A stretch of 64,000 nt of DNA from Lepidodermella squamata. Taxonomy: Eukaryota > Animalia > Gastrotricha. This document shows, one piece after another, positions 60,371 through 64,000 of the stretch. The translations under genes and the position numbers were made by a program. Below the pieces are notes generated by a model that saw nothing but the letters and a program-made list of their open reading frames with translations, was not told the DNA's origin and did not search any database. The stretch covers positions 496,001 through 560,000 of the forward strand of contig JBLDXI010000055.1 of NCBI GenBank assembly GCA_047495785.1, read 5' to 3'. Numbering within the stretch: the stretch's first letter is position 1; every line of letters starts with the position of its first letter.

Positions 60371-63300
60371 ATGAGCGATCCACATGAAACAGAAAAACAC
60401 GAGGACGGCGTCACTGTTATCACGGAACAGGAGGATGTCGGCCATCACCATAGATATATTCGCTCCTCAAGCGCTTCTAGTGCGCATCGGGCACATTTTC
60501 GTCTCCCAGGGGATGTAGCGGAGACCGCTGGAGGGGGGACGGAGTTGAAGTCAGCTCTGAGGCGTCAAACCACTCAAGACGACAGTACTACGTCTGATAG
60601 CCGGCCGGGATCTTTGGGTACGCCCCGACAAAGCTGGGCCGATTCGGTTGACGATAACCCTCGCAGCCGAGCTTCATCGATCGGTGCATTCTCGCGACAA
60701 GCTTCCCGTCGAGCTAGCATTGCTTCTGTAATCGCGGCACCGATTCGTGGGAGCGTGAGCCGGAACTCCGTGTTGTCGGTGGAACAAGTGAAAAACGACG
60801 CTTGGCAACGATTTAAAGACAGCTGCTGTGGCAGCTTGTGCGCAAAAGGAGATGCGAACATGGACGAACTAAAGCACGAATCAGCGTCAGATTCTCACAA
60901 AATACCGCTTCGTGTGCTGTACAGACGTCTCGAGGTCGATCCTGTTGTCGGCCTTTCCGACGGAGAGGTAAGAGAACGCATTGATCGCTACGGCCTCAAC
61001 CGAATTCGTCCGCCACCAACGATTCCTGAATGGTATAAATTCGGCAAACAACTTATCGGAGGCTTTTGCATTCTTCTTTGGGTTGCTGCTGCGCTCTGCT
61101 GGATCGCTTACGGCATTCAAGTGTCAACTATGGACTTCGCCCCTGCTGATAATCTGGTCGTCGGCATCGTGCTGGCAATTGTCGTAAGTTTCGCAACCAA
61201 ATGATCAATCATCCTTCAGCCTGCAATTTTCTGCAATTAAGATTACCCTGTCTGCGATATTTGCGTACTTCCAAGAGGCAAAGTCAGCAAAAATTATGGA
61301 GTCATTCACTAAAAGCTTGCCGCAGTACACGAAGGCAATCCGTAACGGCGAGGAAACTGAGGTTCCACTGGACGAATTGGTACCAGGCGATATAATCAAG
61401 GTAAAAGGTGGCGATCGCATTCCAGCCGATTGCCGAATCATCGAATGCAGTTCCATGAAGGTCGACAATTCTTGTCTAACTGGAGAGTCGGAACCTCAAT
61501 CACGCTCAACCGAATTTACAAACGAAATCGCGTTGGAAACCAAGAATATGATGTTCTTTTCGACTTTTGCTGTAGAAGGTAGTTTAGCAATTCCTTTCCT
61601 TTTAGTTAGTTCCCTTATATAGATAGAAAACTAACAATCCTTTCAAAAGTCTTTTAGAAAGGCTAAATTAATTGATCTAGTCAGCTGACTAAACGATGAA
61701 ACAGCTCATCTTGCGAGTTAATCGTGATTAAAATTGCAGAGGATCAAACCTGTCGGCTTCGATCTCAAATTTGGTTTATAAGAGTCTACTTGGGAGTAAC
61801 TGACGAAAACAGCCTACTTAGAGATGTTGTTAGACAAATGAGGATTAGATAAAAACACCACGGTGACGCGCTCCTATATGAAAGATTTCAAAAGAGATGT
61901 AAAATTAAGGGTAAATAATATTTGTTAAGGCAATGCCACCGGAATTGTCGTAGCAACTGGCGATACGACTGTGATGGGCCGAATCGCCCGACTAACGACG
62001 GGTATCGAGACAAAGCCAACTCCTTTATCTCGTGAAATGACGCAGTTCGTGGCTATCATCTCAAGTAAAGGCTGATGCAAATAGAAATTGATATAAAGCT
62101 AAACAGATTTGTTCATGGACAGTTGTTTCCGTCATTCTTGGAGTGCTTGTTCTTGTGATCATCCTGCCGATTGGCATTAACTGGCTTGTCGGAATCGTTT
62201 TCATCATCGCTTTGTTCGTCGGAAATGTGCCTGAAGGTGCTATTATCGAGGTTACTGTATGTCTTACTCTTGCCGCGAAGCGAATGGTTAGTTGTCAAAA
62301 CGAACAATTTTCATTTGCAATCGCTTCTAAATTGTCTGAATCTAGGCTAAACGAAACGCGCTCGTGAAAAATTTAGAAGCCGTAGAGACGCTTGGTTCCA
62401 CTAGCACGATTTGTTCGGATAAAACAGGGACATTAACTCAAAATCGAATGACAGGTGAGAATTTAGCGTAAAAAACCCGACAGTCTTTATAATCGACCTA
62501 ATATAAAATAGTGTCTCATCTATGGTTCAATGATCGAATTTACGATGCCGATATTTCGGAAAAACAAATAGTCAGCAATTACGACAAAACTTCGGACGCC
62601 TGGCTTGCTCTTCATCGCATTATGGCTTTGTGCAATCGAGCTGTCTTCAAACCAGGGCAGAGCGATATAAATCCTATGGAACGCGAGTGTATCGGCGACG
62701 GCTCAGAATGCGCTTTGTTGAAATTCGGCGAGCAGTCCTTTGCCGGCAAGTCGACTGTTGATGAATTCCAAAAGTTGTGGCCTAAACAAGTTGAAATTCC
62801 ATTCAACTCAACAACGAAAATGCAAGTCTCCGTCCACAAGGTGCCTCAAGGGTTTCCAAGCGTTGGAATGTTCCATTTGGTGATGAAAGGCGCTCCTGAA
62901 CGCATCATCGACTACTGCTCTACGGCTTTGACAGCGAATGGGGAGATTGAGATAGACGACAATTTCCGGGCCAAGTTCAACAAAGCCTATGAAGATATGG
63001 GTGGTATGGGTGAACGCGTTCTCGGATTCTGCGACTTTAGCTTACCAGCTCACGTCTACCCGCCTAGTTACAGATTCGCAGCTGAGCCAGAGCCTAATTT
63101 CCCTGTTACCGGCCTACGTTTTATTGGTTTAGTGTCTTTGATTGATCCACCGAGACCAGCTGTCCCTGATGCAGTTAGGCGTTGTCGCAAAGCTGGAATT
63201 CGAGTTATAATGGTAACTGGAGACCATCCCATCACAGCTAGAGCTATCGCTAAGGCCGTAAACATTCTCTCCCCGGCTTCAAAAACTGTCGAAGATTTGG

Positions 63301-64000
63301 CGAAGGAGAGAGGCGTTCCGGTTGATCAAATTGACAAAAAGGAGGCTAAGGCTGCTGTTGTTAGCGGTGGGCAACTTCGAGACATGAACTCGCAGCAGCT
63401 GGATGAAATTATCATGACTCATCCTGAGATTGTTTTCGCGAGAACATCGCCTCAACAGAAGCTTTTGATAGTCGAAGGTTTCCAGCGATGCGGTGCAATT
63501 GTCGCTGTAACTGGCGATGGTGTTAACGACTCGCCAGCGTTGAAACGAGCTGATATTGGCATTGCTATGGGCATCACAGGGTCGGATGTCTCGAAACAAG
63601 CAGCTGACATGGTGCTGATGGACGACAACTTTGCGACCATTGTCTTCGCAGTCGAAGAAGGCCGGTTGCTTTTCGATAATTTGAAGAAAACTGTATGCTA
63701 CATTTTGGCGTCGAGTGTCACCTGCGACGTGCCTCCATTGATTTATATCCTCTTCGGATTACCGTTGCCCTTGGGCACAATTCCTATGCTTATCATTCCG
63801 CTTGGCACTGACTTCGTTCCCGCTATCACGTTCGCCTACGAGAACAAAGAGGCTGATCTTATGCTGAGGAAGCCCCGCGATCCTAACGTAATTTTCCCAT
63901 CAAATTTGAATTGCTGAGCATGTTTTTGTGATTTTTAGAAAGATAAGCTTGTCGGGCCCGCGATGATGTCAGTTTCGTACGGCCAGAACGGTATTATTCT
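60371..64000 (+). CDS. P-type ATPase IIC (Na+/K+-ATPase alpha-like), divergent ion-binding residues; 3' end beyond window
   Basis: [115 protein letters not shown]. Confidence 0.92.

What the first reader, a model, noticed from the sequence alone, without database searches (positions are those of the whole stretch)
62215..63845. Na+/K+-ATPase-like pump with rewired cation-binding site
Seen: TM4 [16 protein letters not shown] (canonical VANVPEGLLATVTVCL; gains a Glu). TM5 [13 protein letters not shown] (canonical YTLTSNIPEITPF; N776>S, E779>C, new Asp one residue later). TM6 [12 protein letters not shown] (canonical LCIDLGTDMVPA; D804>P, D808 kept). DKTGT, TGES and GDGVND are intact. Known: E327, S775, N776, E779, D804 and D808 coordinate Na+/K+. 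Inference: an active ATPase with different ion selectivity or stoichiometry, or a non-ion substrate; comparable to divergent invertebrate P2C paralogs such as nematode catp genes. It also has a ~160-aa N-terminal extension rich in RRxS/RxxS kinase sites.
Basis: partly seen in the sequence, partly recalled or inferred. Interest (0 to 1): 0.7.

Follow-up and report, generated by a model that had tools for sequence, protein, structure and literature searches.

The report
Sodium-pump paralog with rebuilt ion pocket
A small invertebrate (probably a gastrotrich) keeps an intact, strongly conserved relative of the sodium-potassium pump whose ATP-burning parts are untouched but whose ion-binding pocket has been rebuilt, so it very probably no longer swaps 3 Na+ for 2 K+; what it moves instead is untested.

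Summary
Window 60371-64000, plus 547 bases beyond the window end, encodes an 8-exon, 1162-residue P2C (Na,K-ATPase alpha-type) protein with no stop or frameshift. DKTGT, TGES, KGAPE, DPPR, TGDHP and GDGVND are intact. Against solved pumps, E327, S775 and D808 are kept, but N776S, P778T, E779C, I780D, D804P and T332E are present.

A tandem copy 9.5 kb downstream has the same pocket. Between the two, synonymous sites are saturated (pS 0.78) and pN is 0.11, so both are under strong purifying selection. Changes at canonically invariant positions hit 37% of membrane positions but 8% elsewhere.

The genome has 11 alpha-like genes: two canonical, and an 8-gene clade (100/100 support) holding this pair, one near-canonical gene and five with a Cys-lined pocket. 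The scan already reported one of those five on other DNA. All eight share an N-terminal extension with an RNSV...CCGSL motif. About 230 of the closest outside proteins all have canonical pockets, and none exceeds 61% identity.

Most likely it is an active, beta-dependent pump with altered stoichiometry or cation.

The parts
60371..61183 (+). Exon 1 (aa 1-271): start codon, about 130-aa Ser/Arg-rich N-terminal extension with conserved [16 protein letters not shown] and CCGSLC blocks, Cation_ATPase_N domain, TM1-TM2
   Evidence: ORF and gene model. Pfam PF00690 at aa 176-243. Extension motifs shared by the 8-gene clade.
61242..61578 (+). Exon 2 (aa 272-384): end of TM2 and A domain with TGES (61479-61490)
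   Evidence: Spliced alignment. Pfam E1-E2_ATPase. Motif table.
61930..62064 (+). Exon 3 (aa 384-429): A domain to TM3 linker; preceded by the only long intron (351 bp)
62123..62286 (+). Exon 4 (aa 429-483): TM3-TM4. Pocket motif [16 protein letters not shown] at 62218-62265, with E327 kept (62233-62235), A323G, and T332E (62248-62250)
   Evidence: Alignment to solved pumps, query 1-54 = pig alpha1 291-344.
62346..62454 (+). Exon 5 (aa 484-520): DKTGT phosphorylation site, Asp at 62418-62420
62512..63887 (+). Exon 6 (aa 520-978): N and P domains (KGAPE, DPPR, TGDHP, GDGVND at 63513-63530). TM5 [13 protein letters not shown] at 63699-63737: N776S 63714-16, E779C 63723-25, I780D 63726-28. TM6 [12 protein letters not shown] at 63789-63824: D804P 63798-63800, D808 kept 63810-12
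   Evidence: phmmer against the PDB, E 5e-167, residue-by-residue alignment. Pfam.
63939..64000 (+). Start of exon 7. The gene continues beyond the window. Exon 7 = L004 3940-4209 (TM7, M7-M8 loop with AYGQ), followed by a GC-AG intron. Exon 8 = L004 4263-4547 (TM8 MQWGGL = D926G, TM9, TM10, C-terminus ...HRELFL, stop TAA). L004 position = window position minus 59999
   Evidence: Alignment of exon 8 to solved pumps.

Best explanation
Gene A is a functional, selectively maintained P2C-type P-type ATPase alpha subunit that keeps the full ATP-driven phosphorylation cycle. Its cation-occlusion pocket has been rebuilt. It belongs to an 8-gene radiation seen only in this (probably gastrotrich) genome, and gene B is its tandem twin.

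Shown:
- an intact 8-exon reading frame;
- intact catalytic motifs;
- strong purifying selection on both the membrane and cytoplasmic parts;
- replacement of four canonical side-chain ligands (N776S, E779C, D804P, D926G), plus P778T and loss of the C-terminal YY;
- gain of two acidic residues next to the pocket (T332E in TM4, I780D in TM5);
- retention of E327, S775, T807, D808, Q923, E954 and of AYGQ in the beta-binding loop.

Inferred:
- Na+ site III is gone, and sites I and II cannot exist in their canonical form, so the 3Na+/2K+ cycle is lost.
- A smaller or shifted site is built from E327, D808, S775, S776 and perhaps D780 and E332. It binds fewer cations, or a different one, per cycle.
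- Binding still triggers phosphorylation at D508 (the DKTGT Asp) and dephosphorylation through TGES, in complex with one of the genome's many beta subunits.
- The conserved N-terminal RNSV and CCGSL blocks probably give clade-specific regulation (phosphorylation, possibly lipidation).

A role in ion uptake or osmoregulation in a freshwater animal is plausible but speculative.
For: - Gene model with no stops, 6 GT-AG introns and 1 GC-AG intron.
- Residue assignments against solved Na,K-ATPases.
- All catalytic motifs intact in A and B; Pfam architecture complete.
- A against B: 82% amino-acid identity, pS 0.78 (saturated), pN 0.11 in both TM and cytoplasmic parts. Pocket residues are identical in both copies.
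- Of 419 columns invariant in canonical pumps, 70 are changed in both A and B. That is 46 of 123 TM columns against 24 of 296 non-TM columns (odds ratio 6.8, p 5e-12). This is targeted remodelling, not decay.
- In the tree the A/B stem is long (0.42) and the tips short (0.07, 0.17): a burst of change followed by conservation.
- At least 8 beta-subunit-like loci are in the genome.
- Published mutants show that a pump with sites I and III blocked can still be phosphorylated through site II alone (PMC10812997).
- A natural two-residue pocket change gives a 2Na+/1K+ pump in Artemia (PMC10756188).
Against:
- There is no activity or transport measurement.
- No 3D model of the joined protein was made, so it is not shown that E332 and D780 point into the pocket.
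- D804 and E779 are needed for both Na+ and K+ binding in canonical pumps. The pocket may therefore bind nothing, and the protein could act without transport.
- Orthologs in other species were not found, so conservation rests on paralogs within one genome.
Confidence: 0.6

Rival explanations
1. It is a non-transporting alpha-like protein. It still cycles or binds ATP but serves as a scaffold, junction or signalling component, as proposed for pump-independent roles of some Na,K-ATPase alpha subunits. The pocket changes simply reflect release from ion-binding constraint.
For: - Four key ligands are lost, including D804 and E779, which canonical pumps need for any occlusion.
- Pump-independent roles are discussed for C. 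elegans CATP-1 (PMC11631496).
- The same genome is reported to hold other pseudo-enzymes (unchecked notes).
Against: - The membrane domain is as constrained as the cytoplasmic domain between A and B (pN 0.11 in each).
- The new pocket residues are identical in both old copies.
- Release from constraint would predict drift there, and eventually in DKTGT, TGES and GDGVND, which are all intact.
Confidence: 0.22
2. It is an ordinary 3Na+/2K+ pump isoform whose substitutions are tolerated.
For: - E327, S775, D808, Q923, E954, Q111 and N122 are kept.
- Overall identity to canonical pumps is about 60%.
Against: - N776, E779, D804 and D926 are identical in more than 230 nearest outside proteins from many phyla and in this genome's two canonical genes.
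- Established mutagenesis knowledge (not tested here) is that D804 and D926 substitutions abolish or cripple K+ and Na+ binding.
Confidence: 0.03
3. It is an unexpressed or recently dead gene copy (pseudogene) that still looks intact.
For: No expression data could be obtained.
Against: - A 3489-nt reading frame over 8 exons with correct splice signals.
- The duplicate is old enough for synonymous sites to be saturated, yet pN is only 0.11.
- All 11 paralogs are intact.
Confidence: 0.05

Closest known systems
Canonical Na+,K+-ATPase alpha subunit (P2C; e.g. pig alpha1 3WGU, shark 2ZXE)
   Same: About 60% identity over the N and P domains and TM5-6 (E 5e-167). Same Pfam architecture. All catalytic motifs are present, along with E327, S775, T807, D808, Q923, E954 and an AYGQ beta-loop motif. 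It sits inside the animal P2C clade.
   Different: N776S, P778T, E779C, I780D, D804P, D926G, T332E, A323G, L329A, C-terminal YY to FL, and an N-terminal extension of about 130 aa.
The five 'Cys-pocket' paralogs and C19_2180k of the same genome
   Same: Same 8-gene clade (100/100). Shared features are A323G, T332E (Q in C19), loss of D804 and D926 (not in C19), the N-terminal RNSV...CCGSL motif, and a non-YY C-terminus.
   Different: The Cys clade keeps N776 and mostly E779, but has S775A, D804C, G806V and D926C. A and B keep S775, but have N776S, E779C, +D780, D804P and D926G. C19 keeps all canonical ligands.
Artemia alpha2KK Na,K-ATPase (PDB 8K1L; PMC10756188)
   Same: A natural P2C isoform whose pocket substitutions change stoichiometry (2Na+/1K+). 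It coexists with canonical isoforms and is linked to osmotic ecology. It appears among the PDB hits.
   Different: alpha2KK has only two Asn-to-Lys changes, at the N324 and N776 positions. Gene A keeps N324, has Ser at 776, gains no lysine and loses three acidic ligands.
Gastric and non-gastric H+,K+-ATPase alpha (ATP4A, ATP12A)
   Same: P2C, beta-dependent, no third Na+ site in use, fewer ions per cycle. PDB hits score almost as well as Na,K-ATPase.
   Different: H,K-ATPases have Lys at the S775 position and Glu at the D804 position, and they end in YY (established knowledge). Gene A has none of these, and it does not group with a vertebrate clade.
Nematode CATP-1 to CATP-4 (divergent P2C paralogs)
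   Same: Lineage-specific extra alpha-like genes beside a canonical pump (eat-6). Pump-independent roles are debated (PMC11631496).
   Different: Not compared at sequence level, because no catp sequence was on hand. Nothing in the searches suggests orthology.

Membership tests
P-type ATPase, subfamily P2C (Na,K-/H,K-ATPase alpha type) | Phosphorylation motif DKTGT with the catalytic Asp | tested here: met
   [15 protein letters not shown], Asp codon at window 62418-62420.
P-type ATPase, subfamily P2C (Na,K-/H,K-ATPase alpha type) | A-domain TGES; N- and P-domain motifs KGAPE, DPPR, TGDHP, GDGVND | tested here: met
   All are identical to canonical in A and B. None of the 70 changed invariant columns lies in these motifs.
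P-type ATPase, subfamily P2C (Na,K-/H,K-ATPase alpha type) | Domain architecture Cation_ATPase_N, E1-E2_ATPase, Cation_ATPase, Hydrolase, Cation_ATPase_C, with ten TM segments | tested here: met
   Pfam hits exon by exon. Colinear alignment to solved pumps from TM3 to the C-terminus.
P-type ATPase, subfamily P2C (Na,K-/H,K-ATPase alpha type) | Phylogenetic placement among animal P2C alpha subunits | tested here: met
   It lies inside the animal clade (99/99) in the careful IQ-TREE run, next to canonical arthropod, annelid and vertebrate pumps.
P-type ATPase, subfamily P2C (Na,K-/H,K-ATPase alpha type) | Obligatory beta subunit (SYGQ motif in the M7-M8 loop; beta genes present) | tested here: inconclusive
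   The loop reads EDAYGQEW against canonical EDSYGQQW. At least 8 PF00287 loci are in the genome. Pairing was not tested.
Canonical 3Na+/2K+ Na,K-ATPase | Side-chain ligands of shared sites I and II: E327, S775, N776, E779, D804, D808 | tested here: not met
   E327, S775 and D808 are kept. N776S, E779C and D804P are changed.
Canonical 3Na+/2K+ Na,K-ATPase | Na+ site III (Y771, T774, Q923, D926, E954) and the C-terminal YY that controls it | tested here: not met
   D926G, T774A, and a C-terminus of RELFL instead of ETYY. Y771, Q923 and E954 are kept.
Canonical 3Na+/2K+ Na,K-ATPase | Measured 3Na+/2K+ electrogenic transport, ouabain-sensitive | not testable with these tools
   This needs expression and electrophysiology or isotope flux.
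H+,K+-ATPase | Lys at the S775 position and Glu at the D804 position | tested here: not met
   Ser and Pro at these positions. The defining residues are taken from established knowledge.
Artemia alpha2KK-type reduced-stoichiometry pump | Lys at the N324 and N776 positions | tested here: not met
   N324 is kept and position 776 is Ser. Definition from PMC10756188.
Nematode CATP family | Orthology or shared derived pocket residues with catp-1 to catp-4 | not tested
   No catp sequence was retrievable by reference. None of the 150 representatives or 350 close hits that I named is a nematode catp.

The most novel reading that the evidence does not exclude
A, B and the Cys-pocket genes form a previously undescribed, gastrotrich-specific P2C subfamily that has evolved a new transport specificity. 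Examples would be a single-site electroneutral exchange, an H+ or NH4+-coupled pump, or a divalent or soft-metal cation pump. The subfamily uses a pocket rebuilt around E327, D808 and newly placed carboxylates or thiols, and it is regulated through a clade-specific N-terminal phospho/lipid module. It would be the first animal P2C ATPase that is neither a Na,K- nor an H,K-pump.
Probability: 0.3. Interest if true: 0.8.

Novelty: new variant of a known kind. Interest (0 to 1): 0.6.

Why it matters
The cation-binding residues of Na,K-ATPase are among the most invariant in animal proteins. Every one of about 230 nearest relatives from many phyla has the same TM4, TM5 and TM6 motifs.

This genome has an old, selectively maintained set of pumps in which the catalytic engine is untouched and the pocket has been rebuilt in two different ways. 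One way is Ser/Cys/Pro/Gly with shifted carboxylates, in this gene and its twin. The other is Cys-lined, in five paralogs. A near-canonical intermediate (C19) sits beside them.

That is a natural mutagenesis series for a long-standing question: which residues set ion selectivity and stoichiometry in P2-type pumps. It may also point to an unknown ion-transport mechanism in a freshwater meiofaunal animal.

Tried and rejected
I stopped there and did not use read laying, so there is no transcript evidence.

2. Orthologs. Four searches found none.
- Exon 6 against 1.84 billion representatives: the best hit is 59-60% identical, and none of the 150 shares the pocket.
- Exon 6 against the 90%-identity clusters, proteins of 252-801 aa only: the best is 61%, and all are canonical.
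- The N-terminal extension region of paralog C19 with full-length candidates allowed: only canonical pumps match, and only over the non-extension part.
- The 596-aa exon of a Cys-clade paralog, 328-1043 aa: the best is 58%, and all are canonical.
Proteins longer than these limits, and unsequenced gastrotrichs, remain unseen, so 'lineage-specific' means 'not found elsewhere'.

3. P0009, a Logan protein with VGNVPEG, YILAGNVTT and LLIALGTD, looked like a possible relative. It falls outside the clade. Its sample (SRR25400218) was not followed up.

4. The first spliced alignments with the full protein as query produced spurious mini-exons from the low-complexity N-terminus. I redid them with the core as query.

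5. dN/dS as a ratio could not be given, because dS is saturated. pN and pS are reported instead.

6. Joined step left out. The spliced 1162-aa protein was assembled only inside scripts, for alignments and trees. It was not sent to search, fold or complex tools. Searches were done exon by exon, by reference. No 3D model of the pocket was therefore made.

7. Literature searches for naturally D804-less or pocket-rewired P2C paralogs found only Artemia alpha2KK and mutant studies.
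Full report
**What is there**

The window is G000:C55:496001-560000 of a 121-Mb, 151-contig eukaryotic assembly. Its size and contig number fit the published Lepidodermella squamata (gastrotrich) assembly of 122 Mb in 157 contigs (PMC11660948). I did not verify the species.

The finding's coordinates cover only part of a gene. From ORFs and the sequence I built an 8-exon model. A spliced protein-to-genome aligner that I wrote recovers exactly the same model.
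- In the window: 60371-61183, 61242-61578, 61930-62064, 62123-62286, 62346-62454 and 62512-63887.
- Running past the window end: 63939-64209 and 64262-64546 in window numbering, which are L004 3940-4209 and 4263-4547.

The product has 1162 residues and no stop. Six introns are GT-AG and one is GC-AG. Six introns are 51-59 bp long and one is 351 bp.

Exon-by-exon alignments to solved pumps fix the numbering on the pig alpha1 scale.
- TM4: [17 protein letters not shown]327 is kept; A323G, L329A and T332E are changed.
- TM5: [14 protein letters not shown]771 and S775 are kept; T772I, T774A, N776S, P778T, E779C and I780D are changed.
- TM6: [13 protein letters not shown]807 and D808 are kept; D804P is changed.
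- TM8: MQWGGL. Q923 is kept; D926G is changed.
- C-terminus...HRELFL instead of ...ETYY.

DKTGT, TGES, KGAPE, DPPR, TGDHP and GDGVND are all canonical. The Pfam architecture is complete. So three of the six shared-site ligands, the key site-III aspartate and the C-terminal tyrosines are gone. Two new carboxylates sit one turn (E332) or one residue (D780) away from lost or kept ligands.

**It is a live, constrained gene**

A tandem paralog B lies 9.5 kb downstream (L005 2318-6071). It is 82% identical in protein and has the same pocket. The only difference near the site is QWCGL for QWGGL.

Between A and B, synonymous sites are saturated (pS 0.78) while pN is 0.11. The value is the same in membrane and cytoplasmic parts. 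The duplication is therefore old, and both copies have been under strong purifying selection, pocket included.

I compared A and B with 134 canonical sequences. Of the 419 columns that are at least 97% invariant in canonical pumps, 70 are changed in both A and B. These are 46 of 123 membrane columns but only 24 of 296 non-membrane columns (odds ratio 6.8, p 5e-12). The engine is preserved and the membrane domain is remodelled, which is the opposite of decay.

**Family context**

The genome holds 11 P2C alpha-like genes, all with open frames.
- Two canonical genes sit in tandem on C13. They have every ligand and a YY C-terminus.
- One odd gene is on C54 (E327Q, DKSGT).
- One near-canonical gene is on C19. 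It keeps all ligands but has T332Q.
- Five genes carry S775A, D804C, G806V and D926C, a Cys-lined pocket.
- The last two are A and B.

A careful IQ-TREE run (LG+C20 PMSF) gave these supports:
- A+B: 100/100.
- The Cys clade: 100/100.
- An 8-gene clade of C19, A/B and the Cys clade: 100/100.
- C19 as sister to the rest: 92/85.

The clade lies inside animal P2C, beside canonical arthropod, annelid and vertebrate pumps. A 93-row FastTree agrees. The simplest history has four steps. First, an extra alpha copy acquired the N-terminal extension and a polar residue at 332. Next came E332 and A323G. Then D804 and D926 were lost. Finally, the pocket was refitted separately in A/B and in the Cys clade. 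The A/B stem is long (0.42) and the tips short (0.07, 0.17).

All eight genes share an N-terminal extension with a conserved (R/Q)(R)NSV(L/M)(S/T) block, followed about 20 residues later by CCGSL. In A and B the rest of the extension is poorly conserved (pN 0.49), apart from ASRR(A/T)S(I/L)AS. RxxS/T sites are only mildly enriched.

**Outside this genome**

Four large searches found no protein with this pocket or this extension. The nearest outside proteins are canonical pumps at no more than 61% identity, and about 230 of them carry essentially identical TM4, TM5 and TM6 motifs.

These searches could only use single exons by reference, which limited the length of candidates. Gastrotrich data may also be absent from the collections. 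So 'lineage-specific' is provisional.

**How it probably works**

Intact catalytic motifs and even constraint across domains argue for a working E1-E2 cycle.

Without D926, T774 and the C-terminal YY, there is no basis for Na+ site III. Without N776, E779 and D804, canonical sites I and II cannot form either. This rests on established structural and mutagenesis knowledge of Na,K-ATPase.

What remains is the TM4 carbonyls with E327, plus S775, S776, T807 and D808, with D780 and E332 nearby. That could form one site, or perhaps two. Two published results show that such reduced pumps can still cycle and be useful:
- Pumps with sites I and III blocked are still phosphorylated through site II alone (PMC10812997).
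- Two natural pocket changes give a 2Na+/1K+ pump in Artemia (PMC10756188).

I therefore favour an active, beta-dependent pump with reduced or altered cation stoichiometry or selectivity (0.6). AYGQ is kept in the M7-M8 loop, and the genome has at least 8 beta-like loci. Which ion it carries is unknown, and a link to freshwater ion uptake is speculation.

The main rival is a non-transporting role (0.22). A canonical pump (0.03) and a pseudogene (0.05) are unlikely.

**Limits**

There is no structure model, because the joined protein has no reference and was kept inside scripts only.

**Relation to earlier notes**

The scan had already reported a Cys-pocket paralog on other DNA (s1-422782). My analysis places them in one 8-gene clade and shows that the pockets differ between the two subgroups.

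Noticed in passing
L004 5228-6519, minus strand (G000:C55 about 561.2-562.5 kb, just beyond the window end): A DEG/ENaC (amiloride-sensitive sodium channel, Pfam ASC) gene lies between the two pump genes A and B, convergent with A. A sodium channel sandwiched between two odd sodium-pump paralogs might mean shared use, or it might be chance.
   Followed up: partly
L005 2318-6071 (G000:C55:566317-570070): Tandem paralog B has 1136 aa and 7 exons; it lacks A's intron after the DKTGT exon. It has the same rebuilt pocket and an HRELYL C-terminus.
   Followed up: yes
L032 (G000:C54:4250300-4260299), gene at about 4507-8132: Another divergent alpha-like gene has E327Q (PQG), N324H, DKSGT instead of DKTGT, TGEA instead of TGES and D926N. 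It still has a canonical TM5/TM6 and a YY C-terminus, and its frame is intact.
   Followed up: partly
L025, L026, L029, L030, L031 (C1:1046k, C20:1556k, C13:1552k, C66:97k, C13:3495k): Five paralogs have a Cys-lined pocket: D804C, D926C, S775A and G806V, giving an LVTD motif like SERCA. All five are intact. One was reported earlier by this scan.
   Followed up: partly
G000:C14:505500-511800 and C144, C13:4030-4070k, C24:835-837k, C12:554k: There are at least 8 Na,K-ATPase beta-subunit-like loci (PF00287), including a three-gene cluster on C14. This beta expansion parallels the alpha expansion.
   Followed up: no
L004 4210-4262 (window numbering 64209-64261): Intron 7 of gene A uses a GC-AG splice pair (CAG|GCAAGT). 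In paralog B the corresponding intron is GT-AG.
   Followed up: no
L045 (Logan SRR25400218 contig, 5383 bp): An unrelated organism's P2C gene (P0009) also has a partly rewired pocket: VGNVPEG, YILAGNVTT, and LLIALGTD (D804A). This is an independent case outside the clade.
   Followed up: partly
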